In this document: in pieces, positions 168 to 57,607 of the stretch
Layout of the letters: each line of letters begins with the position of its first letter
Position numbering within the stretch: position 1 is the first letter of the stretch
Assembly (NCBI GenBank): GCA_048013815.1
Contig: CM106585.1
Coordinates: forward strand, 18,538,001 to 18,602,000
From: Setoptus koraiensis
Taxonomy: Eukaryota; Animalia; Arthropoda
Direction of reading: 5' to 3'
DNA length: 64,000 nt
The notes under the pieces: generated by a model
The model's database searches: none
Seen by the model: only the letters and a program-made list of their open reading frames with translations
What the model was told of the DNA's origin: nothing
Program-made: the position numbers and the translations under genes

Positions 168-2445
168 TCATTGTGTGCTTATTATTGTATATTGTACTGG
201 ATTACGGCCCAGTTTTGTCACTTGAGAGAATACATTCCAAAGACCTCTTGACACGTGATTTTGTATTTGGGATGGGCAGATTAGACGGTATCCAGCATAT
301 GCGACGGCACCCAATAATGTATATTTTAATCCCATTCTTATCAGTACACTCGCGCGACTTTTTTCTGGTACAGTCTCCAAGGACTGTATTTCCGTTTCTG
401 TAGTTTTTCCCCAGTTACTCACTATACCTTGCAAGTGACCTATTCCAACAACAGCAACTATAGAAACGAAAAGATATGAATAGTTTGAGTAAGTATTGAG
501 GATCTTGATAATATTCATAGATCAGATGTATTCATAGATCAGATGAAGACTTACCTGTTGCTTTGTTTAAACTCTGTGCGCTTGCTGCAGAATATATGTT
601 ATGGGCCAAGTAGGCATTCCTTTCATCCAAAAGCACTCTTTTAAATGCAGGAAAATCGGCCGCTAGCTCTTTCAGCAATTCTTCCAGAACGTCTTTGTCT
701 TTGAAATTTTCTAACTCATCTTGTGACATATTAGACATGTCAGCTGTTATAGCAATGTAGACAAATTTGATTTTTTGCCAAAATGATAAGGAATTGACCA
801 CTCTAGAGATGGTAACTTTGAGAGATCTGTCACCAAAGTATAAGCGACAACCGGGTATCTCGCTAGCTTGTCGAACCGCCGCTCGAAACTCTCCGCCTGG
901 GGCCATGCCTAACTTCTTTGTTAGCATAGCAGAGAGTCTCAGAAACAATAAAAATATAGTGCCTTGTACAGCACCAGCTCTTTTGCTTGCAGTTCTAAAA
1001 TTAACAAGGCTGAACTCTTGACCACATTCAGAAAGTAATTGCTCTTCATCTAATCGCAGCATCATTTCCCTTTCACGGCAAAGCTCCAAAACAACCGCTG
1101 CGGGTCTTATCATTTGCATCACACTGACAACATCTTGGATGGATTTTTTGCTAAAATGAGAAGTGCCTATCAGGTAAACAGGGGACCCTTCTCTTGTCTG
1201 CAGCTTAACCACTGTCTTGGGAAGATCTAGCTGTTCGGCAGCCAACTCGGGTAGGACTTCTTCCGGGGGCCGACTATCAACAACAATAGCGTCGGATTCT
1301 TCTGAAACGGGGGCTGTGGCATCGGAGGATGTTTCTCTCGTCTCATTACCATCTTTCAAACTGACATGCGTTTCGTCTTCCTTGTAATCCTTGAGTAGTT
1401 CTGCAGATTCTTTAGAATCATTAGTCGATTCAGGTTGCGTATGAGCGCCTATATTGGCAGTTAGCCAATCTTTATCGATTAAAGTTGGCTCTGGCGTGGT
1501 GGAGCTGTTCGTTCTTTCTTTTGTGATTCGAGATTTTCCTAAATCTGGAACTGGTGCATTGAAAGCATCAGTAGATTTTTCTCTAGTCTCATTGTCTAAA
1601 GCTCCCAACATGATGTTTGTTGTGGTATCCGGTGACTGGACATCCCTGTTACAATCTATCAAGTCATGATCAGTCTCTTGGGATTGCTCACAATCTCTAG
1701 TTGGTTTGGACACATTTTCTAGTTCGTGATCAAGTACTTGAATTAGAGCTTTGAATGTTTCTCGCTGTCGTTGAAGTAGTGAATTATCATGCAGTTTGTT
1801 TGGATCATTCTTTGTTAAACTATCATCGTGCTGATGTGAGGATTCTTTGTTATCATCATCTTTGTTAGCTGTTGCGCCAAACGATATTAGTGGTTTATTA
1901 TTCTGTAACATTTCATCAATGGAAAATTGATCTGAGTTGGATGCGACGGATTCGAGGAGATGATTAAATACGAAACTTGCATCTTTCTGGTCCCTTGTCG
2001 CTGAACTATCTAGGCGACCCTGATTGAGGTCGTTCCGTGGGCTATTATTGGTGGACAATGGTGGTGCTTTAATAATATTTGATGCCTGCATATCTTTAGC
2101 ACTAGATTTAGAGAAGAGATCCGATGATGGTTGATAATTGTGATTATGCTGCTGCTGCTGTTTTTGTTCTTCATCTAAATATTTTTCATCGATGCCGCTC
2201 TGTTGCTGCTGCTGCCTGTGATTTGTGACGGGAGGGCTCAATCTAGCCGACTTGTGCTGATTAGTGCCTCTAGAATTGTTATTTTTTCTCTTCCTAGTTC
2301 TCTTGTTGGTCTTATTGCCATGCGTATTCTTTTGATTATTATCCGCGGTATTAAGGGTGCCAGATGTTGTAGTATTGGCGGCGACTGTTGCATGCTGAAC
2401 TGACTTGACAGCATAATCACTTTTGTCTACACTGGAATGGTGCAT
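168..2445 (-). CDS. TRABD: TraB domain-containing protein (TRABD-like), join(complement 555..2445, 168..457), ~726 aa; long disordered N-terminus and C-terminal hydrophobic segment
   Basis: The ORF 532..2445 contains TraB motifs (VYLIGTSHFS, AVVLELC, GGEFRAA, GDRSL..T, LLDERN.YLA). The separate ORF 168..518 contains the C-terminal TraB motif VAVVGIGHL.GI..NW and a TM-like segment (YTLLGAVAYAGYRLI). A phase-1 intron at 458..554 (donor GTAAGT, acceptor TTTCTATAG) joins them in frame. Confidence 0.87.
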
Positions 2446-3390: not shown

Positions 3391-6300
3391 ATGGTTTTGG
3401 AGACATTCGTTGCTTACGCTTTCAACTCATATATAGCAGACTATTTTGATAATATCAATGTTGATCAACTTAAGATTGCCTTTGAAAAGGGCGAAGTGGA
3501 ACTGGAGAGGCTTCCTCTTAAGAAGGATGCCCTCAAACAATTCAATTTGCCAGTGGACGTTCTAGAGGGCATCGTTGGCAAAATAAGCATCAAAATACCG
3601 ATATTGGCTTTGCTAACTGAGCCATGGATAGTTAAAATCAAAGATCTGACACTCACTGTGGCGCCAGTCATAAACGATGCTGACGAGACCATGCAATCTG
3701 AGCAAGGTTCATTAGATTCCATAGAATGGACTACACCTGAATGGAGAACCTACTATGACGCGAGGTACGACAAATCATATTATGCTTCTTCCTATACTTC
3801 CTGGTTGTCTAGCGTTAAATCAGTTGTTTGTGATATCTATAAGAACATTCAATTGGAGGTCGAAACACTCAACATTCATTATGAGGATATAAACTCAGGT
3901 GGATTCAAGTTGGATATAGGAAGGTTGTGCTTCCAACAACCAGATGAATTATCGAAATTGGTTTTAAATGATGTATCCATAATATTTGTTAATAATTGTT
4001 TAGAGGATTTAGCACTCGTTGAAATGGATCATCTAACTTTAGAATTCTCAACAGATGAAGAAACTCATGACACTCAAGTGAAAGGTACAATTAGCTGCTT
4101 AAATATTACCGATCTGAATATTGACGGGAAGACATCAACAAACACATCTAGAAATTTGGAGAGTGAGATTATAAACTTTACGTTCACCAAGTACAAGCGT
4201 CTGATAAAAGATAACAACAACTCAGTAGAAAAAGATCTAGTCCTAGAAGCTTATGTATCATCAATGCAATACATCCACTCAAGTCAATTTTGTAGGGAAA
4301 CCATCAACTATATCAAAAGCATCGTCAAGTCACTACTAAACAGCAATGATGAGTTCGAAAGGCACTCTAAAGGTCAGCATACAACGTGGTGCCAAGAATT
4401 CAATAAATTGATCGACATTAATATAGAGAATGGCACTATCTACGTGATCGACGACGACAAAGAAAACTACTTACCTATGTTGCAGATACCAATACAAGAC
4501 TTCAACATTTGGCAATGCTTCAACAACGATCAACGGAATGGGCAACTGTTTTCAACAGTCAGCTGTAACTATTACAATAGGGAACTCTCTGACTGGCAGT
4601 CATTCCTTGAGCCATGGAAATTTCATCTGACTTGGGACCTCAATTCAGGGTCTATGAGAGAGAAAAAATGTGACCGAAAACTCGGACTTAACTTGAAGTC
4701 TAATGAATCAATCAAGATGAATCTGACGAGTTCGTTTTTAGATCTATACGATATAGCATTGAGGGAAAAGATTGTCGAGTTAAAATCCACTTTTTTTGGA
4801 CCTAAAGTGTGGAACTTGAAATCCCTGACTCTACCAAACTTCAATCGAAGAGTGAATGGATACGAAAATTTAAGACCAAAAACAAACCAATCTATGTTTC
4901 TTCTGAAAAATGAAACAGGCTGCCGTTTGCATTTCCGTCTTGGAACCGTGGACCAAGAAGAAACGGCAATTCAAAGAAGTCATTCTCACCGTATTGCATC
5001 TAACGATAATACGACAAGTAGCCGAACTAGTTTGTCTGGGTCCGAATCCAACGAAGAATCGTCAACATCTCTTGCTCAATCATCTGCATCTCTATTGGCT
5101 GATATAATTTCTAAGTCTAATCCCCCTTCAAAACCAAAATGGATCTCAGTAGAAGTTGATCAAAGTGTGCCCTTTGATTTTGACGAAAGCCCCATAGCTC
5201 GACTGAAAAGAGTTAGATCAAATCAAGACAAACGTCATGTTCTTACGATTCGTATCGAAGGATGGAAAAGTATGTCTCCTATATCCTTGGATACAGTCGG
5301 AGTTTTCTTTCAGGAAGCAAGCTCAGATCAGATAACAAAAGAGGATACTATAATTTCAATATCGATTGTTTTGGACGGTAATAGTGCACGTAAGATTATA
5401 TCAATCAGATCTGGTTTGCAACTACTTAACAAGCTGGATACAAATATGGAAGTTCACTTTGTTGAATCCGATCAAACGCTCTACATTATGCCAGAATTTC
5501 GTATAGCTGTTCCGATGAATTATCTATACGACACTATGTACATACGTCCCTGCAGTGTTGGAGTTACTAGTAGTGAGAAACCCTTAGATTGGGAGCAACT
5601 TCGTACTAGAAACGAGGCGCAATGTGAAATGCACATTTGTCACCCTATCACGGTGACGACTTTCAAACAATCATCATATTGTACTTCGTTGCCGTACCGA
5701 GTTGCAGTGCTTATTCAAAGAGAAGATTTGGAGGATGAAACTCTTGATTGGATGAGATCATCTAGAACGAAACCTGCTCATTGCATCACTTTTCAGCCAC
5801 CACTGACCATAGTAAATTTGCTTCCGTACAAGATGCAGTACTTTATTGACCCAACAAACTGTAACGACAATTTGGAACCAGGGAAAGAAGTAAAAATCCA
5901 TAACGTGGACACCTCACAAATATTCAACATATATTTCGTAATGGAAAACTTCCCTAAGTCCAAGCCCATGAGCTTTAGTCCTGGGGCTACACGCGACTTC
6001 ACACACATCTTGGAGATGGTTGATGAAAGGAATCGAAGTCTATTTTTGCAAGCCAAAGTAGTCTTATCTCCAGGTGAATCACCGTCAATGCAAGTTCTGA
6101 TATCTGCACCTTATTGGTTTGTCAACAAAACTGACTTGCCCATAATCTTCAAACAAGAGGGAGGGGTTTTAGAAGCAGCTGGCCAATTCAACGAGCATGA
6201 AGAAACCAAAATTAAAACACCACTTTTATTCTCATTCTATGACTCGGACTGTCCTATGATGTGCAGTATGCGTCTCGGTAAATCACAAGGACAATCTAGA

Positions 6301-7380
6301 TGGTGCAGAAGTTTCTACATTGAGAGTGGTAATGGTGTTAGAAGACTCCGTACGATAGATGATGATTGTGAGACTGGTCCCTGCGTTTATGAGATTGCCA
6401 TCGAGATTCGAAAAGGAACCGGCATGTATCAAGATACCCAGATAGTAACATTCAGCTCGAGGCACGGTTTTGACTCTGTTGCTCGGACCCCGATATCGAT
6501 AAGGCCGTCACCCCAGCAACGTCAACTAATTTCATACAACCCGAACGCGAGTTTGGCGGAACGAATTGCCAACCACGCTATGAATATGTTTTCATGTAAG
6601 CAACACTATCAAACAGGCCTCTCCTTTGTTGTTCCAGGTCTTACAGTTACGGTAGTAGATAAATCTAACGACGAACTGATTCTAGCATCTTTTGAAGATG
6701 TAGCAATAGATTACAGTTCAAATATCAAGGAACACTTGTTGAACTGTTCGATTCAAAACGTAAACATCTACAACCAGCTGGAGGACGCTGAGAAAGGTCT
6801 TGCTCTATCTTTCAACAATGTTGTTCCAGAAGGAGATAATGAAATTAAGAAACCAGCTGTTCGTGTACTTGTAGATCGATTGGTATCACACAGTTTCTCC
6901 GCAAATGTATTTAAGCAAGTGCAACTTTCTTTGGGAAATCTGGTACTCAATATCGAGGAAAAACTTATACTTAAACTAATCAACTTTATTGGTTACAAGG
7001 ACCCCGCTAATGAATTGCGTCTCCTTAAGGACCAAGAGGGTCATAAAGAGATTGTAAGGAAGAAGCCCGCTAATTATTACCTTGGTCTGTTACGAATTGA
7101 TCTTTCGCAGCTATGTTTGAGTGTTATGACTGCTAGCTCGCTTCCACCCGATTTGGAACGTATTAAAGAGTACCTTGGTTTCAAGCTCATTCAGTTTGAG
7201 GGTGCCCATGTTGAATTTTCTCCCTACATGAAAGTGAATGTGTTTGAGACTTTACATACCGCTCTCGAATCTATTGGACGTTACTACAAGGCAGAACTCA
7301 AGCGACAAGCAGCTAGGATTTTAGGAGCCGTGTTGGGCCGTTTATTGAACATTCGAGCGAATTGGATTGGACGACGATAA
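3391..7380 (+). CDS. VPS13D: VPS13 family bridge-like lipid transfer protein, VPS13D-like, internally and C-terminally shortened (1329 aa, single exon)
   Basis: N-terminal Chorein_N domain (MVLETFVAYAFNSYIADYFDNINVDQLKI...GEVELERLPLKKDAL). VPS13D-like blocks: CNYYNRELSDWQSFLEPW, IRIEGWKSMSPISLDTVG, ISAPYWFVNKTDLP, YEIAIEIRKGTGMYQDT, LPPDLERIKEYLGFKLIQFE, ELKRQAARILG. Confidence 0.85.
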   Translation: MVLETFVAYAFNSYIADYFDNINVDQLKIAFEKGEVELERLPLKKDALKQFNLPVDVLEGIVGKISIKIPILALLTEPWIVKIKDLTLTVAPVINDADETMQSEQGSLDSIEWTTPEWRTYYDARYDKSYYASSYTSWLSSVKSVVCDIYKNIQLEVETLNIHYEDINSGGFKLDIGRLCFQQPDELSKLVLNDVSIIFVNNCLEDLALVEMDHLTLEFSTDEETHDTQVKGTISCLNITDLNIDGKTSTNTSRNLESEIINFTFTKYKRLIKDNNNSVEKDLVLEAYVSSMQYIHSSQFCRETINYIKSIVKSLLNSNDEFERHSKGQHTTWCQEFNKLIDINIENGTIYVIDDDKENYLPMLQIPIQDFNIWQCFNNDQRNGQLFSTVSCNYYNRELSDWQSFLEPWKFHLTWDLNSGSMREKKCDRKLGLNLKSNESIKMNLTSSFLDLYDIALREKIVELKSTFFGPKVWNLKSLTLPNFNRRVNGYENLRPKTNQSMFLLKNETGCRLHFRLGTVDQEETAIQRSHSHRIASNDNTTSSRTSLSGSESNEESSTSLAQSSASLLADIISKSNPPSKPKWISVEVDQSVPFDFDESPIARLKRVRSNQDKRHVLTIRIEGWKSMSPISLDTVGVFFQEASSDQITKEDTIISISIVLDGNSARKIISIRSGLQLLNKLDTNMEVHFVESDQTLYIMPEFRIAVPMNYLYDTMYIRPCSVGVTSSEKPLDWEQLRTRNEAQCEMHICHPITVTTFKQSSYCTSLPYRVAVLIQREDLEDETLDWMRSSRTKPAHCITFQPPLTIVNLLPYKMQYFIDPTNCNDNLEPGKEVKIHNVDTSQIFNIYFVMENFPKSKPMSFSPGATRDFTHILEMVDERNRSLFLQAKVVLSPGESPSMQVLISAPYWFVNKTDLPIIFKQEGGVLEAAGQFNEHEETKIKTPLLFSFYDSDCPMMCSMRLGKSQGQSRWCRSFYIESGNGVRRLRTIDDDCETGPCVYEIAIEIRKGTGMYQDTQIVTFSSRHGFDSVARTPISIRPSPQQRQLISYNPNASLAERIANHAMNMFSCKQHYQTGLSFVVPGLTVTVVDKSNDELILASFEDVAIDYSSNIKEHLLNCSIQNVNIYNQLEDAEKGLALSFNNVVPEGDNEIKKPAVRVLVDRLVSHSFSANVFKQVQLSLGNLVLNIEEKLILKLINFIGYKDPANELRLLKDQEGHKEIVRKKPANYYLGLLRIDLSQLCLSVMTASSLPPDLERIKEYLGFKLIQFEGAHVEFSPYMKVNVFETLHTALESIGRYYKAELKRQAARILGAVLGRLLNIRANWIGRR

Positions 7381-7479: not shown

Positions 7480-10400
7480 TCAATCTTGCATTTCTTCTGG
7501 TATATCATGAGGGTTTATAATTCCTGGTACCATCATTTGCCTACTCCTTTTCTCCGCTTCGTGTTGTTGAAGGGCGGCCTCTCTCTCCGCTAGAAATAGA
7601 TCACTATCATCAGCTCCAGAGTACTCCTAAAGATTAGAATAGTAGAATAGAAAAGTTAGTTCAGATCCATTTTATAACTATGTAGCGATGTTTTTTACGA
7701 TACTAAAAATATACTTACTCTTATTTGAACAAGAAAATCTCTGAGATGGTTTTTGAAGGCCGCTATATCCTGATCAAGATCGAAGAATCCTTTGACTGTT
7801 ATATCGATTTGGGCATCTGTCAGGTGTGGGTAAACAGATTTTAGGAGGTCTGTAACGTATTTGTGAACATATTGTACATTTGTCATACCGTCTAGAGTTT
7901 GCTTTGATGGATTAAGATAGACTTTTATCTTGTTAGTTTCAATCAAAGAAAATATTTGCGCTAACACTGTCGTCTGTTGCACCAAACCAGCAGTTAGAGA
8001 GGGATCAGTGATAACACTAAATAAATGTTGTAATATGTCTAGACAGTAGTTCTGATAAAACTTTTGCATTGCATCTTCATCTTGGGCGATATTCTCCAGC
8101 AAGGCCTCTAAAGACTGATGGCCTATGTCTGCAACGTTACGCATGGTGTGCTTTATGGCCCAGATTATAGAATCCAATACCAATTTGAACTGTTCCGGTG
8201 GTAATGCTAGCACGGCAGGGAAACAATGTTTGATTACTTGATGAAGCATAGTGAAAAAGTGGATCCTATGCTCTGGATGATCCTCGAAATTTTCGCTAAT
8301 CATTTCTAAAGTACATTGGAATACTGCATCAAAGATCCCAGGTATGAGTTGGATACATGATTGCTGCAAAAAGGTATGAATAATAAAAAGATTAACTTGA
8401 GTTAAAAGCTAGAAAAAAAGTTGAGCGAAAAATTAGTAAACTGGACAGCTAGGTACTTACGTTTAGCGCTTCGACGATGGTAGCCATGAGAGCTAAAACC
8501 TCTGGCTCTCTTGCTGCGGGCACGGCGCATTGTTTATAATCTAGAAGTACTGCTTCAAGTAAAGGTGGAATGAAGCTGGTCAGTACCAACGATGGAGTGT
8601 TACACTGGCTCACCCAACTTGATATCAATTTGAGTACTTCTTTTTTGACAGTTCTCATATGCCTTATAACAGGTTGTTTGGTGACTGCTTCACCGTTCGA
8701 GGAGATGGCAGCTGTTATATTCAAACTCATAACACGGTATAAATTGAGCATGTCCAAGTATATAGCTCTGAGTTGCACAACAAATGCGTGTCCGAGAGAC
8801 TTACAAGCTCTAGAGTTTAATTTGAGAATATTTGCAAGTTGTTTCACAGCTTCTTGATCCTTGAGCACTTCTACGTTCTTTTGTGCCTGAGATATTATAT
8901 CTTTCCAAACATGGTTGGGCAAGCTCATGTATCTCTTTATCAGTTGTTCCTGTATTGGCGGATCTACTTGGGCAGCGATCATACAACCAACTGCCTCATA
9001 GAAGGTGTGGACTTGTTGAGGCTGAAGATCACAGATTATAGAGCTAAGATTGTTCAAAATCTCATCAATAAATGGTGTTACCTCAGATGGTTGTAGTAGA
9101 ACAAAGTGACGACGGCATTTTTGTGCGATTTTTATGAATGTATCACACGCCATATCTTGGACACCATCGTGGGTTTCATGCATAAATTCGAAGAGCTTAT
9201 TAACCACTGTCTTCAAGAATTTCCAATGTGCACGAAGGAATCTTGGGTATTGTCCGACAACATACATAATATTTGCAGCTATTATAGCTTTGTTGTCTTT
9301 GCCACGTTTTTGCTCGCATAGGCCTAGTAAGTCCTTGATCACAGTGACTAGAAAGCGCCTCTCGTCTTCTTCGATCATTGCTCCACTTATAGAACCTATC
9401 GCCCAGCAAAGAGTATTCAAATTACGCCATGACCATTCGCGACCATTGACTTGATTTGTAAGCCTTGCTGTCATGATTCGCTCCGTATCAATGCAATCTA
9501 AATGCGTAAGATATACTAGAGTCTCTCTCATATTTTTGTACAATGTTATAGAATCAGTGTCTTTCATGAATTCCCTAACCACTTCACCTTGATCGTTCTC
9601 GACAACTAAAACCTCTTCAGGTTTGGCCATCCTTCCAATTATTATATATCTCAATCTTGATAAGTGTGAACTATAAATATGAGCCTCGTTAGATGAGAAA
9701 TCGGATGTTAGATTATTTTTGTTTTCGTATAATGTGTGAGTCAGACTGTTCCAGTACTCGAGACAAATCTTAAAAATTTCGACCTCTTCAACATCTGATA
9801 TTAATAATAGGTAGTGAAGAGCAGTAGTTAATGTCTGGTGGTGTTCGGCATTTTGTTCGAGTAAATGACAATGCTCTTTGAGGAAGGTACACAAGAATAA
9901 GCTGAGATTTTGAATAAATTTTTGTTCTTCATCTTGACCGTTTGCGTAAGCCTCTTTGATGTAGGTGGTGGATGGTAGCATTTGTTCTAATTCGCGCATA
10001 GTAGTGGTGAAAAGCAAAATGAAGACAGGATCGTGACGAGCATCTTTGATACCAGCTATCTCTGTCAAACATTTGAGTGAAACATTCCTGAAAATGGGCA
10101 CAGGTAAAAATTTTGAGACGAGCAAATTGATTAAGTTGGTTTCAAATATATAACCAACTGGAATCCAATTCAGGAAAGGTAATAGTGTTTCTAATGTGGA
10201 TGATACAAGCGAGATATTTGTTGAAGTATCCATGACAAAAGAACATAATTGGAATATCTGTGAAAATTCCTGGCACATTGTATCTTTCAAGTATTTTGCT
10301 TTGGCTTGAGTCAATTGGCCGCTGGAGAAATCAAATACTTCTTCACTAAGTAATTTTAATATAGTCATATTGTTTTGACAAAGGCTCTCGTTTGTTTTGC

Positions 10401-10893
10401 TTGCTCCAACTATGTCACCTATGAACGTTGGCCACCTTTTTGGCCATTCCCGTTTTAGGATCTGAACTAACACCATATTTAGCTTGGTGAGATAGACTTT
10501 TTCACGTTCCATAGAAGCGGAATCTGATGAGGTTTTTATAATGAGATCTACTATGAAGCTCTTAATTCCTGCAGTTTGATTGGATGGTAGAGCATTCCAG
10601 CGAGTTTTAATAAGATTCTCTAAAATTTGTAGAGCAAAATATTTTGTTTCTTGATTCCTCGAATATTGAAGTATGGCATCGACACGTGTCCATGCCTCTG
10701 GATCTTCTTTAAGACGGGTCAATAGTGTTTGGGCCACTTTCTGTTGTGTCGAATCACCAGCATACATGGCATTAACAACACTATCTAGAAGATTGATATC
10801 CAATCGTTGATTTAGATCTAGTAATCGTTCACCCTCCTTTTCAAGAGTGGATGCACTATTATTATTGCCGTTGATTATACCAGGTGAAGACAT
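7480..10893 (-). CDS. XPO1: Exportin-1 (CRM1/embargoed), join(complement 8461..10893, 7719..8363, 7480..7626), 1074 aa
   Basis: Hallmark CRM1 sequence (LLDLNQRLDINLLDSVV, KFLKTVVNKLFEFMHETHDGVQDMACDTFIKIA, DLCEQKRGKDNKAIIA). GT-AG introns at 8364..8460 and 7627..7718 keep the frame. The third exon (not in the ORF track) reads EYSGADDSDLFLAEREAALQQHEAEKRSRQMMVPGIINPHDIPEEMQD*, the conserved CRM1 C-terminus. Confidence 0.97.
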
Positions 10894-21813: not shown

Positions 21814-22313
21814 NNNNNNNNNNNNNNNNNNNNNNNNNNNNNNNNNNNNNNNNNNNNNNNNNNNNNNNNNNNNNNNNNNNNNNNNNNNNNNNNNNNNNNN
21901 NNNNNNNNNNNNNNNNNNNNNNNNNNNNNNNNNNNNNNNNNNNNNNNNNNNNNNNNNNNNNNNNNNNNNNNNNNNNNNNNNNNNNNNNNNNNNNNNNNNN
22001 NNNNNNNNNNNNNNNNNNNNNNNNNNNNNNNNNNNNNNNNNNNNNNNNNNNNNNNNNNNNNNNNNNNNNNNNNNNNNNNNNNNNNNNNNNNNNNNNNNNN
22101 NNNNNNNNNNNNNNNNNNNNNNNNNNNNNNNNNNNNNNNNNNNNNNNNNNNNNNNNNNNNNNNNNNNNNNNNNNNNNNNNNNNNNNNNNNNNNNNNNNNN
22201 NNNNNNNNNNNNNNNNNNNNNNNNNNNNNNNNNNNNNNNNNNNNNNNNNNNNNNNNNNNNNNNNNNNNNNNNNNNNNNNNNNNNNNNNNNNNNNNNNNNN
22301 NNNNNNNNNNNNN
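21814..22313. other. Assembly gap (500 N)
   Basis: Run of N; the ORF-track entries spanning it are artefacts. Confidence 1.
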
Positions 22314-22505
22314 GCACTTGTGTTAAAGCCATGTACGATCTAATAGAATATTGTATAGAGGATGATAGTATTATGAGTTCTAAATTCAAATCAAAGTTCT
22401 CGAAGAGTGCCTTGATGGAAAACAGCAACATCTTCATGTTTTATAACTATGTCCAATTATAAGTCTAATAACCAATCTAGTGTCTAACTTTTCTCTATGA
22501 TTTAG

Positions 22506-23384
22506 ATGATCTAGCTTCGTATGATTTCAGCAACAGCCTGCGCACCGTCATATTGGTACCAAGTTATCTTACAGGTGATGAAACTAACTGGGTTGAATCT
22601 ACCAGATTGCATTGGCTTGCAATGGAGGATGTCAACATCATTGATGTGTCGTGGAGCAGTGGAAATCATGGCATTCATTCTAAAGCAGTGGCAGATACAC
22701 CAATAGTTGCGAGACAAATAACCATTCTTTTACATTATCTAGCCCAGTTATATGGACTCAATCTATATATTGAACTCGTTCCAAAAATATATCTCGTAGG
22801 CCACTCTTTGGGTGGTCATATATCTAGTTTCGTCGGTCAAGATTTTCTAGGTCGAATAGGTCGTATAACCGGCTTAAATCCAGCTGGGCCAAGCTTTTGT
22901 TCATAAGATAACAATCAAAGATTGGACCCCAGCGACGCCAAGTATACAGATGTGATTAACACAAACTCTGGCGGCCTAACAACAAGACTCTCATATGGGA
23001 TAACCTGTCCAGTTGGTCACGTGGATTATTATGCGAACGATGGTAGCCGACAACCAGGTAAATTTCCGCTGATATCACACTGCTACTTACTAACTTTGAA
23101 TGTTACTTTGAATAATACACAACCAGTTGCAATTGTTTGTTTTATTTTTTCGATTTAGTTTTTGAATTTCGCCAACAACAGGATGCGAAGTGGTCGTATC
23201 AAATAGTATATGGGCTTGCTCGCACGGCAGATCATTCGAGTTATCTATGAATGTCATCCAAAACACCCTTTACGATATTGAACCCCTGGCGTACTATTGT
23301 GATAGCTATGGTGACTTTTCAAATGGTGTCTACCTGGGCCGAGAGAAATGCCTCAATGACAAGAGAATTTCTCCGCATAGGTGA
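22506..23384 (+). pseudogene. Pancreatic-lipase/phospholipase A1 family pseudogene
   Basis: GHSLG nucleophile elbow (22799..22813), RITGLNPAGP (catalytic Asp position is Asn), in-frame TAA at 22904 plus a frameshift before LDPSDAKYTDVINTN, GHVDYYAN.G..QPG followed by a GT donor, and a later CSHGRS (catalytic His) segment. The sequence ends at the repeat array at 23385. Confidence 0.82.
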
Positions 23385-23450
23385 TCAACCTGTACTGATC
23401 GTCGAATTGTACTGTGCTGATCGTCGAATTGTACTGCGCTGATCGTCGAA
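23385..23450 (+). repeat. Left subterminal array: 3 copies of core (G)CTGATCGTCGAA at 22-bp period
   Basis: Cores at 23395, 23416 and 23438, each spacer containing GTAC. Confidence 0.9.
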
Positions 23451-23619
23451 TTGGCACACGTAACGACATCAAAAACACGTGTGCTATAACACATGTTTGT
23501 TGTAACTTGTGGCGACCCAAGCCGAAAACAACGTCAGTATTATCAATCAGTTCCATATTAATTATTTATTCACACATAAAAACCAAACAGATATCAGTCT
23601 TTAAACGATCAAACAAAAA

Positions 23620-24147
23620 ATGGAGAGCATTTCAATCCCAACTGAGGAATTACCTATTTGTACAATCTGCCAGGAGAAACCTGATCATCCCCACAAGTTA
23701 ACCTGCAGCCACATCTACTGCTATTATTGCATACAGAAACTGGTAAAAGAATCAGTTAACAGTTCAGCCGAATACAATCATCTCAAGCCAAAATGCCCAG
23801 TCTGTCGTAAAATTATCAGTGGATGGAAGCCAATAAACCGTGAGCTCAATACATGGATAGTTGATAAAGTTGTCAGCCATAAAGACCGAGGCAAGGCAAC
23901 AAAATATCTGGTGTCCTGGGCTGTATGTGACCATCCATTTGCACCGAGGAAGAACGTATTAACCTGGGAACCCATGGCCAATCTCAAGGATGTAGGCTCG
24001 ATAGAGGCTATAGAGGATTACCAAGCCAGAAAACATCGCAAAAACCAGGCAAACCATGCACGACGTAAGAAAGGATGTTTAACCGAACCAATTCCAGAAA
24101 CATTGGAGGCCACGGACATTTACGAAAGCTCATCAGAAGACGAATAA
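23620..24147 (+). CDS. RING-HC (C3HC4) finger + chromodomain fusion protein, 175 aa
   Basis: C-x2-C-x11-C-x-H-x2-C-x2-C-x21-C-x2-C RING, then a chromodomain (WIVDKVVSHK...KYLVSW...LTWEPMANL...AIEDY), a basic patch and an acidic end. Strong start context (AAAAATGG), TCAGTC Inr-like motif at 23594, and AATAAA motifs downstream. Confidence 0.82.
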   Translation: MESISIPTEELPICTICQEKPDHPHKLTCSHIYCYYCIQKLVKESVNSSAEYNHLKPKCPVCRKIISGWKPINRELNTWIVDKVVSHKDRGKATKYLVSWAVCDHPFAPRKNVLTWEPMANLKDVGSIEAIEDYQARKHRKNQANHARRKKGCLTEPIPETLEATDIYESSSEDE

Positions 24148-24251
24148 ATATCCTCATCATTATAAAGTAGATTTATAAACTTAAATAAATACTTTTGTGA
24201 AAAAATAAACAAAAAAGGGCCTCACTGTCTTCTCTAATCTCCTCAAGCTCT

Positions 24252-24318
24252 TTCGACGATCAGCAGGTACTTTTTCGACGATCAGCGGGTACTTTTTCCA
24301 CGATCATCAAAGGGTTGA
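24252..24318 (-). repeat. Right subterminal array: 3 inverted copies (TTCGACGATCAGC) at 22-bp period
   Basis: Cores at 24252, 24274 and 24296 (the last with 2 mismatches) are the reverse complement of the left-array core; spacers contain GTAC. Confidence 0.9.
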
Positions 24319-24401
24319 CACGCGTTCGGTCAACAACCTTCATCAATTATCACATAACGTTATTTAATCTAGAATCGCTTTCCATATCGATCTAAACCAC
24401 A

Positions 24402-25311
24402 ATGGCATCTCAAAAGACGAGAGCAAGCCTTCAACGATAATGAAAGGGAGTTGATTAGAGCTCAAGTTAGCTTAGAAAAGCTTAACGTTATCCTCAATTC
24501 GAGCAAGAACGACGTGAAAGCTAGGAATTTGAAAGACAAAGCTTGGAATTTAATTGCATCTAGACTAAACGCAAAAGCTATTGGACCTCCTAGGACGCCA
24601 GATAAGTGTAAAAAATTGTGGGAAAACATCAAGATGTTGGCTAAAAAGAAAGGCGCTGATTATAAAATGCAAGTGAGGAAGACTGGTGGGGGCCCACCAC
24701 CAACTCCACCAACTGATTTCTTATATCAGGTAGCAGCCGAGAATGAGCCTAACTGGGGCGATATTGGATCCAATTTCGATAACGGCGCTGATGTTGACCT
24801 TGGGCCAACATCTAAGCCAGCATCACAGAAGACTGATGGCTTGAATGATGATCAAGAATCAGAATTATTCTCAAAATGGCATGATCTCACGAAAAGAACG
24901 AAAAGAGAGGTTGTAACTGCTGGTTGGATGCGAGATTATCCAGAGTTGGTACAACGAGATCCAAATTATTCGACGATCAGCAGTGGTTCATCTAAAGGAA
25001 CCGAAAAGTCAGATAGCCAGTTTTGGAAAATCAAGCTTGATAATGAGAGGGATCTACATGCTATGCGAACTCGTTCTTTGGCAGTCGAGATTGAAGCTAA
25101 CGAGATGAAAAGGAACTATTATTCGCTCAAGATAAGTCGCCTAGGCAAGCTTGAAGACAAAAGCTCAGCCAGAGATGAGGACGGCGGATCTGTAGGCACT
25201 CTGTCAGAGATTGAGAATATTGAAATGAGCAAATGGGTAACATTTCCACAATCAGCACAAGTCATTTCCACTATCAACTTAGTGCTCACCCTAACCTTAG
25301 TGCGACACTAA
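24402..25311 (+). CDS. Myb/SANT-like (trihelix/MADF-type) DNA-binding protein of PIF/Harbinger type; natural ATG (24402) is out of frame with the main ORF (24451..25311)
   Basis: KDKAWNLIASRLN...RTPDKCKKLWENIKMLAKKK...RKTGGGPP is the typical Harbinger-associated Myb-like signature, followed by a C-terminal coiled-coil-like segment. In-frame KRREQAFNDNERELI precedes the ORF-track start with no in-frame ATG, implying a 5' frameshift. Confidence 0.75.
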
Positions 25312-25325
25312 GCGGCCACTAGCGG

Positions 25326-26450
25326 TCACTTGTAAGTGCGACATGAGAAACTCACCACATGATTGATGAAGGAATTCCTAAGTTGTTTTGCAGCTACAAC
25401 AGAAGGATGAGAATCTATTGAGTTCATTCGACGACTAAAATTTGCTACAACACCTAAATGTTCTCGGCCTTGAATAGAATTAACAACGGTTGAATCTTTG
25501 ATAGTATTCTCAACCATAATACCGAATGTATTGATTGTTTCCTGAAATTTTTGTTCATATTCTAGTATAACTCATTGGAAAAGTGTGGGTGGTATGCTTT
25601 GCCTGCATACTGGGCTTTGACATAGCTACGGAGCCTATTTTGTGTCTTGGATCGCTTCAAGTTTAGAAATTTTTGCAATATACAAGGATTAGAGACGTAG
25701 GAACACTCACTTAGAAAGTGACACCTATCGCCAGTTATTGGATCATTTCTCAACCCTATCATTCAATGTGTCGCACAGGGGGTTCTTGAAATATATGTTT
25801 TGGTTGCACAACTCGACTTGTATGAAACATTGTGAGATGAAATTTGGAATACAATCTCATATCAGCTAGTAAGAAATTCTGTTCAAGTTTGCCAGCGATA
25901 CAGCCAGCACTTTCTGAATTCAACATACCTATCAAATGATCCGTCGCGGGGTGTACCAGCTGGTTTTAATTGATCTGATGAGGTCAAACTGTCTTCTTTG
26001 AAAGATTTGTGGTTCTTGTCTCTCTGAGTGTGTTGATGTTCGGTTACTGATGGCTGATACCGTCGTTCGGCGGCGAAAAAATGTCGAAGCCGTAATGTAA
26101 GATGGTGAATGTATTCGATTCCAACTGGTGAAAAGTTTGATACTAGAGACAATCTATGCGACCCAACAAAAGCCAAGCTGTTTGTGTTAGACCAGATACT
26201 GACAACCCTTCTTTAAGTTACTTGAGATGGTGCGACATTCGCAGGATCGCACACATTTGTTAATTGTTCAAGCTCACAATTACTTGATAATAGGATTTGC
26301 ATTGCATCAATACAATAATTGCTACTGATTTTCATCTCGCGAAACATTGTTTGCAAAATGCTTTTGTCAGATAAAACACTGTGCCGCGGTGCACTAATAA
26401 TTTGTGTGTTTTTTCACAGTAGGAATTGAAAAATGTTGCCAAAGCAAAGA
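25326..26450 (-). pseudogene. Probable heavily decayed Harbinger-type (DDE_Tnp_4/HARBI1-like) transposase, convergent with the Myb-like ORF
   Basis: Fragments in several frames resemble the transposase in the expected order (LSDKSILQTMFREMK; AFVGSHRLS..S..S...IHHLT; ITGDRCHFL..SYVSNP; terminal AAKQLRNSFINHV), with many stops. Similarity was judged by eye only and catalytic residues are not clearly seen. Confidence 0.35.
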
Positions 26451-28854
26451 GGGAGATAATTAGTTTCGTCGATCTATATCATCTGCCTCTACTTTCTGCC
26501 AACAGGTCCAACTCTCTTTGAAGGTTTCCAGGCTTCATTCACCGACACAATCCATTACACAAAGAGTAACAAAGTAATGAGAGTATAGCCAGTAAAGTCA
26601 CTTGCACGTGTGAATAAACATGAAAGACAGCGATATTACCGCAATAGCTGATAAACAGCATCAATTTATTCTTTGATACTTCTTACAAAAATAACCCACA
26701 CTTAAGGTAGCGGAACTCGTAATAACACAACTGACGCACTTGAATGCGGGAATTGTTGCCGCATCGGGCCGATTATCGCCGATTTCGCATTTGCATGTCA
26801 TGCAAATGTGAAATGTGTGAAACAATTTGGCAACATTAGAATTGGCAACACGAGAATTGGCAAGCCGAGCGACTGTGTCGAGGGAGCGCATATCGCACCA
26901 CTAATGGACACACTTGATCATTAGTGGCTAGCTCGGCGCGCTCATCGGCAACGCCGAGTCATTAGCTACTGACAATTGTGAGCGATTGGTGATGTTGGCA
27001 AGCGAACGTTTTGGCGGAGTGTTTTGGCAGAGTGTCTCGGCGCACAGTGATTGTCCCTCGATCAATCTCGGCGCCCGCTTGCCGTGTCACTGGCACACGA
27101 TGCGGCAATTGTTGCAGGGCGATTGTTGTGATTCGCAACTTGTAAGTCACAAGTTGTGAGGCGCAACAACGATTGCGACAACTGTCTGAATTTGTTTGCT
27201 GGCGCGCGACACTTGCCCAAATGTGACAGCGCAACGTCCGTGTGATACGTTACAAATAAATGTATGTCAAATGGGCAACACTTGTATTGCAAGTACAAGT
27301 GTATGTACAAGTATTATGTGCGAGTATTATGTAATAAGCGCGTCACGTGGGCTCCGGCTGCTCCGGTCGAGCGGCCCATGGAGCCTGGTCGGCTGATTGC
27401 GCAACAAATGCAATCAGCCGACCAGCCGCGTAATGCAAATACAAATAGATACTAGCTATACTAGGAGATGGTGTGTTGAGCATGCGACGGGCCGATGCAC
27501 TAATGACTCGTTACTAATAAGTCATTAGTAATGGGACGCGCGAGACCAACAACCTCTCTGTTCAACAGAGTGTGTTGTGCGTCTCGCCTAAACAAACAGC
27601 CGATTGCTATTAACAAATATGCAATTGTGAATGCGATATTACACAAAGATGACACATTATTACAAATCACTGCAAATGCATACTCACAAACTGCAACATT
27701 TGTCAGTACAAATATCATTTGGCAAATTGGACAATCGCGTCTGACAAGCGCGAACCGTCAAGCGACTCGACTCAGATTGTTGCCATTCAGACTGTGCAGA
27801 CTGTATCGGCTGACTGTATCGGCCAACTGGCATCGGCTGACTGGCGAGCGAGCGTTGACCGCGTTCGGTCTGGCAGTTGTTACGGCCGCAGCAGCACACT
27901 GACAGAACGCAACTAGTCACATGACTGGCGCGACACGTTCGAAGGGACAGCTCACTGACAACTCGTGAGTGAGAGTCGACAAGAGTTTGACAACTTTGCA
28001 CTGTGCGCCAAGTTACAAATTACAATTCTCGTCGGATTGCAATTGCAATTTGTATAACTTGTGGGTAATTGTCTCGGCGCGACTGATTGCTCGCTCGTAC
28101 GATCGCTCGCCGACTCAAACCGCCGCTCAGCTACTGTAATACCTAATATCATAGCTAATATAATGGCTAATATAATGGCTAATATAATAGCTGATATAAT
28201 AGCTGATGTAAAGTTTATAGGTGGCAAATCGTTTTTGGCAAGCGAAACGCAATCAAAGTTGGCTGACAGTCGTTATTGATTGACTTTGAGCGAGACGCGA
28301 GCGAGCGAGCGATTTGGCTCGCGAGTCGCTCTGTTTACCCTCTATCTGTATGCCTAGTGTCCGTGTTTGTGCGTCGTGCCTTGCGATTGACACCGATCGC
28401 AAGCCAACAAATATCCGGCTCGCATTTGTGCTGCCTCCGTTTATCCGGCTCTCGCTTGTCGGACTCTCGTTTATCCGGCTCTCGTTTGGGCCGCCGAGGC
28501 TGCCGATTGGCTTGCGACTGGCGGCCAATTGGTTGATAGTCGCAACTCGTTGCCGGCAAGCCAACAACAACAATTACGTCTCGAATTCACCAATTGCCGC
28601 CCGATGCCGCCTGATACGCGCGGCCCGATGCCCATGTCATCAATCATGCGCTGGTTGCGTCGATCGGCAGCGGCCAAACTGTAAACATATTCATGTGTCA
28701 TGTTTGACGGTCGAACGCAAACATGGCAACATTGTCAGCCAATTGAGCCATTCGCATCTCGGGCTATCGATGCGATGGCCGGCGATGGCACCCGAGCGGC
28801 CCAATAATAATAATAATACATGTAATTGTTGTTGTTGCGTCCAATTGTCTCGCC

Positions 28855-55891: not shown

Positions 55892-57607
55892 ATGAACAAG
55901 ACTACTTCGAGGAACTTCTCTAATAGGTGGTCCGACCCATACAGCTTATCAAGAGGTCCAACAAATTCCATAGTTTCTACTACTCCAAATGTGAACAACA
56001 TCGGGCAGCAGCTCAGATCTCGAACAAGTCATCAAAATCAATCTGCTGTGCCCATCCTAATGGTGAAGAAACCAGCACCTCACCATCAGCAAGAGATTAT
56101 TGTTTCGTCTTCTCATGCCCCATCGTCATTATCTTCATCAACATCTACCAAGTTGACAACATCAAAAATAAGATCAACAAATACGGTGAACATTACATCA
56201 ACCATCAAGAAGACCAGGTCCACAATAGTCACAACAAAAAAGTCAACAACCAGTATCAACAAGATGACCACTAGCACCGGAGGTAGCTCCACTGTGACCA
56301 CTATTACAACTCATCCAACTCGATTGCCATTGGTGAAATCATTAGTTTTATCGCCGAGCAAGCAATATATGTCATGCAACAACCAGCATCAACAGCAGAA
56401 CCAGCAAGACAGTGCTAGAAGTCACCCAGCACCATGTGAAAATTCACAATCTCACAACGGAATGTGTCAAACAGTTACAGGCACTAACCCACACAGAGAG
56501 CAATGTAATATCGATTACCCTTTGAATAGTATTATTGCGGAAAACGAGACAGCAACTGATGAAAATTCAAACGCACAAATGATTCTTGATGTTTCTCCTA
56601 ACAAGCCTAACCAGCATCTCGATAAAAATGATGAAAAATCGGACAAGGATGAGATTAGAACAACAATTAAGGATAACGATAACACCGATAACGCCATCAT
56701 TGTAGTAGACAATGATATAGAAAAATCATCTGAGCAACAGCTAGTCAGTAGTGAATCGCCAATAGCGATATCAGCCATCAATATAAAACAGGAACCAATT
56801 AGCAGCCATTATGATCTCGACTTACGTCCATTTGCTCGTGGTAAATTCGCCCAAGTGAAACGATGCGTACACAAAGACAGTCAAAAAGAATATGCGGCCA
56901 AATGCATAAAGAAACGAAGGAGACTTGTTGATATTAGACATGAAATAATGCATGAGATTCAAGTGCTAAGCCTGGCCAATGTGACTAACCGTATTGTCAA
57001 ACTTCATGATGTCTACGAAACATCTAATGAGATAATTTTAGTGTTAGAAATGGCCGAAGGTGGCGAGCTACAAAGAGTCCTGGACGATGAAGAGGCCATT
57101 GACGAGGTTCATGTTCAGCGTATGGTCAAACAAATTTTAGAGGGATTATTTTATTTACATAAGCATGACATTGCGCATTTGGATATTAAGCCACAGAATT
57201 TACTATTGACAAAAAAATTTCCTGATGGTGATATAAAACTATGCGACTTTGGCATATCTAGACACATAAAGAAAGGAGCAGAAATACGCGAAATTTGTGG
57301 TACGCCTGATTATGTCGCACCGGAAATACTTCGTTATGACCCTATCAGTTTGGCGACTGATATGTGGAGTTTAGGAGTTTTGACATACGCATTATTATCT
57401 GGTTATTCACCTTTTGGAAATGAGAACAAACAACTCACCTACTGTAATATTACGACAGCCAATCTCGATTTTCCCCACGAGTGCTTTTCTAGCGTTTCCA
57501 GTGATGCTATCGACTTCATACAGAAGCTTGTAATCAGAGAGCCTACGGAGAGATTATCGTGCAGAGAAGCCTTAGAGCATAGGTGGCTTAAATCCGTGCT
57601 CAGCTAA
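55892..57607 (+). CDS. Drak: Death-associated protein kinase-related kinase (DRAK/STK17 family), 571 aa, single exon
   Basis: Complete CAMK-group kinase domain (FARGKFAQVKRC, YAAKCIKKRRR, IMHEIQVL, HLDIKPQNLLL, DIKLCDFGISR, EICGTPDYVAPEIL, SLATDMWSLGV) typical of DRAK, after a ~300-aa S/T/N-rich extension. Confidence 0.92.
   Translation: MNKTTSRNFSNRWSDPYSLSRGPTNSIVSTTPNVNNIGQQLRSRTSHQNQSAVPILMVKKPAPHHQQEIIVSSSHAPSSLSSSTSTKLTTSKIRSTNTVNITSTIKKTRSTIVTTKKSTTSINKMTTSTGGSSTVTTITTHPTRLPLVKSLVLSPSKQYMSCNNQHQQQNQQDSARSHPAPCENSQSHNGMCQTVTGTNPHREQCNIDYPLNSIIAENETATDENSNAQMILDVSPNKPNQHLDKNDEKSDKDEIRTTIKDNDNTDNAIIVVDNDIEKSSEQQLVSSESPIAISAINIKQEPISSHYDLDLRPFARGKFAQVKRCVHKDSQKEYAAKCIKKRRRLVDIRHEIMHEIQVLSLANVTNRIVKLHDVYETSNEIILVLEMAEGGELQRVLDDEEAIDEVHVQRMVKQILEGLFYLHKHDIAHLDIKPQNLLLTKKFPDGDIKLCDFGISRHIKKGAEIREICGTPDYVAPEILRYDPISLATDMWSLGVLTYALLSGYSPFGNENKQLTYCNITTANLDFPHECFSSVSSDAIDFIQKLVIREPTERLSCREALEHRWLKSVLS

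What the first reader, a model, noticed from the sequence alone, without database searches (positions are those of the whole stretch)
23385..24318. Intact RING-finger + chromodomain fusion gene enclosed by inverted transposon-like arrays
Seen: a 175-aa ORF with a complete C3HC4 RING joined directly to a chromodomain and a basic patch, with its own Inr-like and poly(A) motifs. It is bracketed by inverted 3x22-bp arrays (core GCTGATCGTCGAA) ending in short GTG(A)TCAACC-like termini. It is intact while the lipase, the Myb start and the transposase next to it are damaged. Established: RING domains are E3 ubiquitin/SUMO ligases and chromodomains read methyl-lysine; in PRC1 these functions sit on separate subunits (RING1/Sce and Pc/CBX); Harbinger-derived proteins in plants (ALP1/ALP2, HDP1/HDP2) modulate Polycomb and silencing complexes. 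I do not recognise a standard cellular protein with this exact two-domain layout, but could not search. Inference: a transposon-borne one-chain reader-ligase that targets H3K9me/H3K27me chromatin or silencing proteins for ubiquitination (anti-silencing or target-site factor), or a domesticated version. The third aromatic-cage position appears to be Cys (YLVSWAVC), so methyl-lysine binding may be altered.
Basis: partly seen in the sequence, partly recalled or inferred. Interest (0 to 1): 0.85.

Follow-up and report, generated by a model that had tools for sequence, protein, structure and literature searches.

The report
Transposon-linked RING plus chromodomain gene
A small intact gene fusing a ubiquitin-ligase (RING) finger to a chromatin-reading chromodomain is real, belongs to a rare unnamed protein family that turns up inside or beside mobile DNA of three different classes, and may be a chromatin-directed helper protein of transposons, though its function is untested.

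Summary
ORF 23620-24147 encodes 175 aa with a C3HC4 RING and a chromodomain, both above Pfam's curated cut-offs, then a basic patch. A model built on a family alignment shows both folds. The inverted 3x22-bp arrays are real: the core 13-mer occurs 6 times against 0.1 expected.

New here:
- **A family exists.** Exhaustive HMMER over 1.84 billion representatives finds only about 7 clusters with the same RING + chromo + basic-tail layout. All are unnamed singletons from raw-read assemblies. No PDB, AlphaFold DB cluster, ESM Atlas or viral entry matched both domains.
- **Shared neighbourhood.** The closest relative (38-41% identity) is also followed by a Myb_DNA-bind_5 gene. It and a third relative carry arrays of the same core motif, C[CG]AC[GT]ATCA.
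- **Other mobile elements.** One relative lies antisense inside a Ty3/gypsy unit, another just downstream of a copia pol.
- **A second setting.** Public contigs show the gene body (about 23589-24166) in a second context lacking the arrays and the Myb gene.

Not confirmed: the neighbouring "transposase", target-site duplications, transcription and any activity. The third aromatic-cage residue is not conserved.

Verdict: probably a transposon accessory protein of a new kind. The ligase and anti-silencing mechanism is inferred only.

The parts
23380..23455 (-). Left end module: terminus GGTGATCAACC followed by three 22-bp units, each holding the 14-mer TTCGACGATCAG(C/T)(A/G) on the minus strand
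23589..24166 (+). Block (ORF plus about 31 bp upstream and 19 bp downstream) at about twice the depth of its flanks in public contigs. It also occurs in a second context without the arrays or the Myb gene.
   Evidence: X1 contig 23589-24162 at depth 100 against 49-57 for the flanks; joint 24166->26772 in all 4 runs; X4/X5 have depth 0 on the arrays and Myb
23594..23598 (+). Inr-like TCAGT, 22 bp upstream of the ATG (presence only)
23620..24147 (+). 175-aa RING-chromodomain ORF
23659..23805 (+). C3HC4 RING (aa 14-62). It has Ile16 and Pro60, positions I take from memory to be E2 contacts, and Arg63, which is invariant in the family.
23854..24030 (+). Chromodomain (aa 79-137). It has Trp79 and Trp100 cage residues and a 9-aa insert (HPFAPRKNV) shared with P0001.
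24025..24072 (+). Basic patch (aa 136-151) on the long C-terminal helix. Most family members have a basic C-terminal tail here.
24143..24148 (+). AATAAA overlapping the stop codon
24248..24318 (+). Right/internal end module R1: three 22-bp units (14-mer on the plus strand) then GGGTTGACAC. It lies 85-150 bp upstream of the Myb gene.
24402..25311 (+). Myb_DNA-bind_5 (Myb/SANT-like) gene. The ATG at 24402 is one base out of frame with the domain frame (24403-25311). It is 48% identical to the Myb ORF next to the closest RING-chromo relative.
24969..24992 (+). R2: a perfect 14-mer plus GGTTCATC-like tail inside the Myb ORF
25244..25297 (+). R3: two degenerate 22-bp-spaced 14-mers plus ...GTGCTCACC at the end of the Myb ORF. 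It is a candidate right end of a 1.9-kb two-gene element.
25560..26413 (-). There are by-eye resemblances only and no statistical support.
22553..23384 (+). Pancreatic-type lipase pseudogene pieces with an in-frame stop at 22904-22906. It is truncated where the element-side sequence begins (about 23360-23380).

Best explanation
The ORF encodes a genuine small protein: RING-HC finger, chromodomain and basic tail. It belongs to a rare, so far unnamed family of accessory proteins of mobile elements. In this genome, probably an intron-poor eriophyoid mite, it is the first gene of a decaying TIR-type DNA element. That element also carries a Myb/SANT-like gene, which makes it PIF/Harbinger-like, and it abuts a lipase pseudogene. 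The 22-bp arrays are clusters of a conserved motif, TTC[CG]AC[GT]ATCA. This motif accompanies the gene in two other loci from other public sequencing runs of unknown organism. It is most likely the binding site of the element's Myb-like protein, as shown for the zebrafish element Harbinger3_DR. Inferred mechanism: the chromodomain and basic helix dock the protein on nucleosomes. The RING recruits an E2 enzyme to ubiquitinate a nearby chromatin protein. The element would benefit either by steering or tethering integration complexes or by blunting heterochromatic silencing. Shown here: the domains, the folds, the family, the contexts and the motif. Inferred only: ligase activity, the chromatin ligand, and the benefit to the element.
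For: - **Domains and folds.** Both domains pass Pfam's curated cut-offs. The alignment-based AlphaFold model has mean pLDDT 76. Foldseek matches Rhino, HP1 and SUV39H1 chromodomains at TM 0.74-0.82 by target, and RINGs solved in complex with E2 enzymes such as TRIM21, RNF146 and RNF168.
- **Family conservation.** At 24-37% identity the alignment keeps 4 Zn ligands invariant in all 9 rows (the other four are each lost in one or two rows). It also keeps Arg63 after the last Cys and the chromo core G91/Y96/W100/E117.
- **L001.** The relative P0001 is followed 300 bp later by a Myb_DNA-bind_5 ORF on the same strand. That ORF is 48% identical to the window's Myb gene. Five copies of CCACTATCA-type motifs surround it.
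- **L005.** The relative P0003 has five downstream copies at 41-bp spacing (82 bp before the first of these) and one inverted upstream copy.
- **Motif density.** About 5 per kb in these loci against 0.15 per kb in the rest of the window, and zero in L002, L003, L004 and L006.
- **Ty3/gypsy context.** L002 is a circular unitig of 5,696 bp holding gag, pol and the RING-chromo ORF. A contig from another sample spans its junction at 99.8% identity.
- **Copia context.** In L003 the ORF lies 133 bp after a copia RVT_2 pol.
- **Polymorphism.** Contigs of public runs show presence/absence polymorphism of the array + Myb part.
- **Precedent.** PIF elements carry a Myb-like gene whose product binds subterminal motifs (PMC9710019).
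Against: - No transposase could be demonstrated next to the gene.
- No clear 3-bp target-site duplication was found.
- There is no second copy in the window. The Myb-bearing form appears single-copy at about half depth.
- The block shared between the two contexts excludes the arrays.
- The third aromatic-cage residue is missing in most members, so canonical methyl-lysine binding is doubtful.
- Two members have lost Zn ligands.
- All relatives are singletons on short contigs of unknown organisms, so adjacency in L003 could be nesting.
- No RNA evidence was obtained, because the run kinds are unknown.
Confidence: 0.5

Rival explanations
1. It is a domesticated or host-retained gene. A transposon-derived RING-chromodomain protein, originally paired with the Myb-like protein, now serves the host as a chromatin regulator. 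The motif arrays would act as promoter or autoregulatory sites rather than transposon ends.
For: - The gene stays intact while the Myb start, the lipase and the rest decay.
- The gene body persists in a second context, and in runs X4/X5, without the arrays and Myb gene.
- In L001 motif copies sit 8-46 bp upstream of the Myb start codon and 12 bp upstream of the RING-chromo start codon, in direct orientation, like promoter elements.
- Co-domestication of PIF genes is common in arthropods (PMC9710019).
Against: - No homologue exists in any named or annotated proteome among 15 billion proteins.
- Other samples of the same study hold none of its sampled words.
- Relatives sit inside retrotransposons.
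- The structure is polymorphic and has inverted terminal arrays.
Confidence: 0.2
2. It is a non-functional passenger. The RING-chromo ORF would be a captured or shuffled gene piece carried along by mobile elements and intact only because it is young.
For: - A 175-aa ORF can stay open by chance in a young copy.
- The two contexts are 100% identical over 574 bp, so the duplication is recent.
- Two relatives have lost Zn ligands.
- No expression evidence was obtained.
Against: - Both domains, the linker Trp and the basic tail are conserved across members only 24-37% identical.
- These members ride in different element classes. That pattern requires long-term purifying selection on the whole architecture.
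- No cellular parent gene with this layout was found.
Confidence: 0.12
3. It is the first reader's literal model. The 934-bp stretch 23385-24318 would be a self-contained miniature transposon whose inverted arrays are its ends, moved as a unit by a Harbinger transposase supplied in trans.
For: - The arrays are inverted and about 70% alike over 75 bp, with similar terminal decamers.
- L005 also has an inverted upstream copy.
Against: - The duplicated block excludes both arrays.
- Further right-end-like modules lie at 24969 and 25244 beyond the Myb gene, which suggests a larger unit.
- In L001 the upstream copy is direct.
- There is no target-site duplication (flanks TAG or ATA against GCG).
- No other copy of the 934-bp unit was seen.
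Confidence: 0.1

Closest known systems
UHRF1 (one-chain histone-mark reader plus RING E3)
   Same: A single polypeptide combines a Royal-family methyl-lysine-type reader fold with a C3HC4 RING. The logic is to read chromatin and then ubiquitinate nearby. (This comparison is from my own knowledge.)
   Different: UHRF1 reads with a tandem Tudor and PHD and also has UBL and SRA domains. It is about 790 aa and a conserved host gene. This protein is 175 aa, uses a chromodomain with an incomplete cage, and is linked to mobile elements. No sequence relationship was found beyond the generic RING.
PRC1 (RING1/Sce plus Pc/CBX) and CBX4
   Same: A chromodomain reader and a RING ligase act on the same nucleosome. 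Foldseek places the chromodomain near CBX2/4/7 and the RING near the nucleosome ligase RNF168.
   Different: In PRC1 the two functions are on separate subunits. No RAWUL domain or Pc box is present here. CBX4 is a SUMO E3 without a RING.
Chromoviral (Ty3/gypsy) integrase chromodomains
   Same: A chromodomain encoded by a mobile element. Many chromoviral chromodomains also lack cage aromatics (from my own knowledge). Atlas shape hits include Chromo + SH3_Tf2-1 integrase tails.
   Different: Here the chromodomain is not fused to an integrase. It is fused to a RING on a separate small ORF, which is antisense in L002. The L002 pol itself has no Chromo hit.
PIF/Harbinger elements (transposase plus Myb-like protein binding subterminal motifs)
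   Same: A Myb/SANT-like gene lies next to the ORF. Repeated subterminal motifs are in inverted orientation. The Harbinger3_DR Myb-like protein binds a 9-bp subterminal motif (PMC9710019).
   Different: No DDE transposase could be demonstrated and no TWA duplication was found. Canonical PIF elements have two genes, not an extra RING-chromodomain gene.
Viral RING E3s that counter chromatin silencing (herpesvirus ICP0 family)
   Same: A RING E3 encoded by a genetic parasite. ICP0-type RINGs appear among the PDB sequence matches and the viral fold matches. This is a functional analogy only.
   Different: ICP0 has no chromodomain and is much larger. There is no specific sequence relationship.

Membership tests
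RING-HC (C3HC4) E3 ligase | Eight Zn ligands C-x2-C-x(9-39)-C-x(1-3)-H-x(2-3)-C-x2-C-x(4-48)-C-x2-C | tested here: met
   C14, C17, C29, H31, C34, C37, C59 and C62. zf-C3HC4 scores 26.1 bits against a cut-off of 21.
RING-HC (C3HC4) E3 ligase | Cross-brace fold like E2-binding RINGs | tested here: met
   The AF2 model matches TRIM21, RNF146, TRIM2 and RNF168 RINGs at rmsd 1.9-3.8 A over 52-59 residues.
RING-HC (C3HC4) E3 ligase | E2-contact hydrophobic residue after Cys1 and a basic 'linchpin' after the last Cys | tested here: met
   Ile16, Pro60 and Arg63 are present, and R63 is invariant in the 9-sequence alignment. Their role is known from other RINGs and was not assayed.
RING-HC (C3HC4) E3 ligase | E2-dependent ubiquitin transfer | not testable with these tools
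   Needs an in vitro assay.
Chromodomain (PF00385) | Profile match above the curated cut-off | tested here: met
   28.2 bits against 25.1, aa 79-137. Relatives score 21-26 bits.
Chromodomain (PF00385) | Three-stranded sheet packed by a C-terminal helix | tested here: met
   Strands at 81-88, 95-100 and 114-118 and a helix at 125-150. TM by target is 0.74-0.82 to Rhino, HP1, SUV39H1 and Oxpecker.
Chromodomain (PF00385) | Three-residue aromatic cage for methyl-lysine | tested here: inconclusive
   W79 aligns with HP1 Y24 and W100 with W45. The third position aligns to His105, or to Cys103 by counting. It is Gly or Glu in most relatives.
PIF/Harbinger DNA transposon | Myb/SANT-like second gene | tested here: met
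   Myb_DNA-bind_5 at E = 3e-10. A homologous Myb ORF lies next to the relative in L001.
PIF/Harbinger DNA transposon | DDE transposase (DDE_Tnp_4 / Plant_tran) | tested here: not met
   No Pfam hit at E <= 1 for four minus-strand ORFs in 25326-26176. Atlas recognition is low with unrelated hits. Only by-eye resemblances remain.
PIF/Harbinger DNA transposon | Terminal inverted repeats with subterminal binding motifs | tested here: met
   The left end against R1 gives about 75-bp inverted arrays. The 14-mer occurs 8 times, all within 23393-25257.
PIF/Harbinger DNA transposon | 3-bp target-site duplication (TWA) | tested here: inconclusive
   Flanks are ATA or TAG on the left against GCG (R1) or CTA/TTA (R3) on the right. 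No exact duplication is seen (and direct reading).
Chromovirus (Ty3/gypsy with integrase chromodomain) | Chromodomain fused to the integrase C-terminus | tested here: not met
   The L002 pol has RVT_1, RNase H and rve but no Chromo hit. The chromodomain sits on a separate antisense RING ORF.
PRC1 subunits (RING1/PCGF, CBX) | RAWUL domain after the RING, or a Pc box after the chromodomain | tested here: not met
   No such Pfam hits. The protein ends 38 aa after the chromodomain.

The most novel reading that the evidence does not exclude
This would be a previously unrecognised family of transposon-encoded 'reader-ligase' proteins (RING + chromodomain). It would have been exchanged between DNA transposons and both major LTR-retrotransposon superfamilies. 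Its members would act on host chromatin, either ubiquitinating heterochromatin components to escape silencing or marking and tethering preferred integration sites.
Probability: 0.25. Interest if true: 0.85.

Novelty: new variant of a known kind. Interest (0 to 1): 0.62.

Why it matters
Mobile elements are known to borrow chromodomains, as integrase tails do, and to encode DNA-binding helper proteins. An element-borne E3 ligase fused to a chromatin reader has not, to my knowledge or in the literature searched, been described. If active, it would be a compact natural reader-writer. It would also be a new way for transposons to manipulate host chromatin, with relatives in three element classes offering a comparative test. 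It gives a concrete cis motif and a partner Myb protein to test. If it is only a decaying passenger, it is still a clean example of a new domain architecture born in mobile DNA.

Tried and rejected
- **Word-indexed homologue searches.** The protein alone gave nothing, the family profile returned only two known members, and the Myb ORF gave nothing.
- **Exact-product look-up** of the window protein: not on record.
- **The search for related loci.** The 2-sequence alignment against metagenomes gave only RING-only hits.
- **Single-sequence AlphaFold** model was useless at pLDDT 47.
- **Transposase test.** Pfam on four minus-strand ORFs and the Atlas on the 109-aa piece were both negative. I therefore do not file the element as a demonstrated Harbinger.
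- **Lipase C-terminus.** I searched the window for the lipase's missing C-terminus using the loose-end letters and found none. The junction is therefore not a simple insertion.
- **Self-BLAST** of 22400-28300 against the window found no second copy.
- **Source organisms.** Paper searches for run accessions to identify the organisms of the relatives were uninformative.
- **PRC1-like subunit** was considered and rejected because no RAWUL domain or Pc box is present.
- **Retrocopy idea.** I considered that the shared block 23589-24166 is a processed transcript copy, since its ends sit 5 bp before the TCAGT and 18 bp after the AATAAA. The joint shows no poly(A) tract and I could not see the other context's upstream side, so this stays open.

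Full report
**What is there**

The window holds an ATG-to-TAA ORF at 23620-24147 (+) of 175 aa. Pfam finds a C3HC4 RING at 26.1 bits against a curated cut-off of 21 (aa 14-62). It finds a chromodomain at 28.2 bits against 25.1 (aa 79-137). All eight zinc ligands are present with canonical spacing. A basic patch (aa 136-151) and an acidic tail follow.

The ORF is bracketed by inverted arrays of three 22-bp units at 23390-23455 and 24248-24313. The core 13-mer, at up to one mismatch, occurs six times in 64 kb against 0.10 expected. As a 14-mer, TTCSACKATCAKCA, it occurs eight times, all between 23393 and 25257.

Three copies lie on the minus strand at the left. All others are on the plus strand:
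- three in R1 (24252-24309);
- one inside the Myb ORF (24969);
- two degenerate ones at the ORF's end (25244, 25266).

The left end, R1 and R2 are followed by a GGTT(G/C)A-type tail after the last 14-mer; R3 ends instead in GTGCTCACC. TCAGT at 23594 and AATAAA at 24143 are present.

**Neighbours**

Upstream are pieces of a pancreatic-type lipase (PF00151) with an in-frame TAA at 22904-22906. Other copies in public reads carry T at 22905. They continue in frame beyond 23359, where the window copy diverges. A search for that continuation in the window found nothing.

Downstream is a Myb_DNA-bind_5 ORF (E = 3e-10). Its ATG at 24402 is one base out of frame with the domain frame.

The "damaged transposase" could not be confirmed. 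No Pfam hit was found for four minus-strand ORFs within 25326-26176. The protein atlas gave low recognition with unrelated hits. Only by-eye resemblances remain.

A 500-N gap lies at 21814-22313. Earlier notes of this scan and the many long intron-free genes (exportin-1, VPS13-like, kinase) suggest an intron-poor eriophyoid mite. I did not verify the species.

**Is the protein real, and is the layout known?**

Exhaustive HMMER against 1.84 billion representatives gave 52 hits. Seven clusters match across both domains: P0001 (E = 4e-23, 41% identity), P0002, P0003, P0016, P0018, P0032 and P0037 with its cluster-mate P0053. All are unnamed singletons from Logan or ENA assemblies.

The alignment shows a shared plan:
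- a RING;
- a conserved Trp;
- W-x-V-x-x-I...RG(K/R)..Y.V.W...WEP..NL;
- a helix ending in a basic tail.

Invariant positions include C29, H31, C37, C59, R63, G91, Y96, W100 and E117. P0002 and P0018 have lost Zn ligands.

With this alignment AlphaFold gives mean pLDDT 76. Foldseek matches chromodomains (Rhino, HP1, SUV39H1, Oxpecker) at TM 0.74-0.82 by target. It also matches RINGs solved in complex with E2 enzymes (TRIM21, RNF146, RNF168). No entry in PDB, AlphaFold DB clusters, the ESM Atlas or BFVD matched both domains well. Literature searches found no description of such a fusion.

**Aromatic cage**

W79 aligns with HP1 Y24 and W100 with W45. HMMER puts His105 opposite Y48. Most relatives have Gly or Glu there. 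The window protein and P0001 share a 9-aa insert with H-x-F-A-P. Canonical methyl-lysine reading is therefore uncertain.

**Contexts of the relatives**

- **L001 (P0001).** The ORF is followed 300 bp later, on the same strand, by a Myb_DNA-bind_5 ORF (E = 2e-15) that is 48% identical to the window's Myb gene. The 14-mer motif TTC(C/G/T)ACTATCA(G/T)(C/T)A occurs five times around the two genes, all in direct orientation.
- **L005 (P0003).** Five copies of (T/C)CC(A/G)CT(A/G)TCAC lie downstream, four of them at 41-bp spacing. One inverted copy lies just upstream.
- **Motif density.** The core C[CG][AG]C[GT][AG]TCA runs at about 5 per kb in L001 and L005 and 8 in 23380-25300. The rest of the window has 0.15 per kb. 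L002, L003, L004 and L006 have none.
- **L002 (P0037).** The contig starts and ends with the same 30-mer, so it is a circular unitig of 5,696 bp. It holds Ty3/gypsy gag and pol (PR-RT-RH-IN), a 122-aa ORF, and the RING-chromo ORF on the opposite strand. L004, from another sample, spans the junction at 99.8% identity. The gene therefore lies inside the repeating retroelement unit.
- **L003 (P0032).** The ORF lies 133 bp after a copia-type pol (RVT_2, E = 3e-66) on the same strand.

**Population and copy data**

In run X1 the gene body contig (23589-24162, no differences) has depth about 100. The left array contig has depth 49 and the R1-Myb contig (24133-25483) has depth 57.

All four runs contain a joint from 24166 to 26772, skipping 2,605 bp. 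X4 and X5, which look like one data set filed twice, show the gene body with 1 difference in 432 bp and the joint. They have zero depth on the arrays and the Myb gene.

The ORF therefore exists in at least two settings, and the identical block excludes the arrays. Other repeats begin at 25358 and cover 26537-26930. I could not see the second context's upstream side. The kind of the holder runs (RNA or DNA) is unknown, so I make no statement on transcription.

**Reading**

The gene + motif arrays (+ Myb gene) form a module shared by loci from three sequence sources whose proteins are only 28-38% identical in alignment. This is hard to explain by chance or by a recent capture.

PIF/Harbinger elements encode a Myb-like protein that binds subterminal motifs (PMC9710019). 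The arrays are therefore most simply that protein's sites.

Without a transposase or a target-site duplication, I call the element PIF/Harbinger-like, not a demonstrated member. The presence of relatives inside gypsy and next to copia elements points to an accessory protein that serves mobile elements generally.

Its mechanism is inferred from domain knowledge only: chromatin docking through the chromodomain and basic helix, then RING-mediated ubiquitination of a nearby target.

Each is scored in its own section.

Noticed in passing
window 23589-24166 and 26772: Public contigs join 24166 directly to 26772 (2,605 bp skipped, ends GT..CG, one extra A) in all four runs. The shared block starts 5 bp before the TCAGT and ends 18 bp after the AATAAA, so it is roughly transcript-sized. 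Its origin (deletion allele, second locus or cDNA-like copy) is unresolved.
   Followed up: partly
window 24969-24992 and 25244-25297: End-module-like sequences (14-mer plus tail) lie inside the coding frame of the Myb-like ORF. Either the protein's own gene carries its presumed binding sites, or these are nested right ends.
   Followed up: partly
window 25358-25570: A 213-bp stretch matches, at about 95% identity, part of a 7.7-kb high-depth contig in X4/X5 (depth 171 against 5-20 nearby). All runs show the same loose end before 25358, so it is a fragment of an abundant repeat or a highly covered sequence.
   Followed up: no
window 26537-26930: Depth is 2-3 times the single-copy level in X1, with several diverged contigs and loose ends at 26698 and 26803. 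This is an unclassified repeat containing a palindrome, TTTGCATGTCATGCAAA.
   Followed up: no
window 22904-22906: The lipase copy in the window has TAA where other copies in the reads have TTA (Leu). The region 22400-23360 exists as two variants that differ by about 5.6%.
   Followed up: partly
window 21814-22313: A 500-N scaffold gap lies 1.1 kb upstream of the finding, consistent with structural heterogeneity of this region.
   Followed up: no
L002 5551-5664 (= L004 173-286): Three 38-bp tandem units that are themselves palindromic lie in the presumed LTR/leader region of the Ty3/gypsy unit, just upstream of the RING-chromo ORF.
   Followed up: no
L002 684-1052 (-): A 122-aa ORF between pol and the RING-chromo ORF has no Pfam match. 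It is conserved in L004.
   Followed up: no
window 24383-24396: Directly upstream of the Myb ATG lies TTCCATATCGATC. It is a degenerate copy of the motif and contains a DRE-like TATCGAT core. In L001 two motif copies occupy the same position.
   Followed up: no
window 532-2445, 3391-7380, 8449-10893, 55892-57607: Long intron-free ORFs for a TraB/TIKI-like protein, a short VPS13-like protein, exportin-1 (CRM1) and a protein kinase fit an intron-poor genome.
   Followed up: partly
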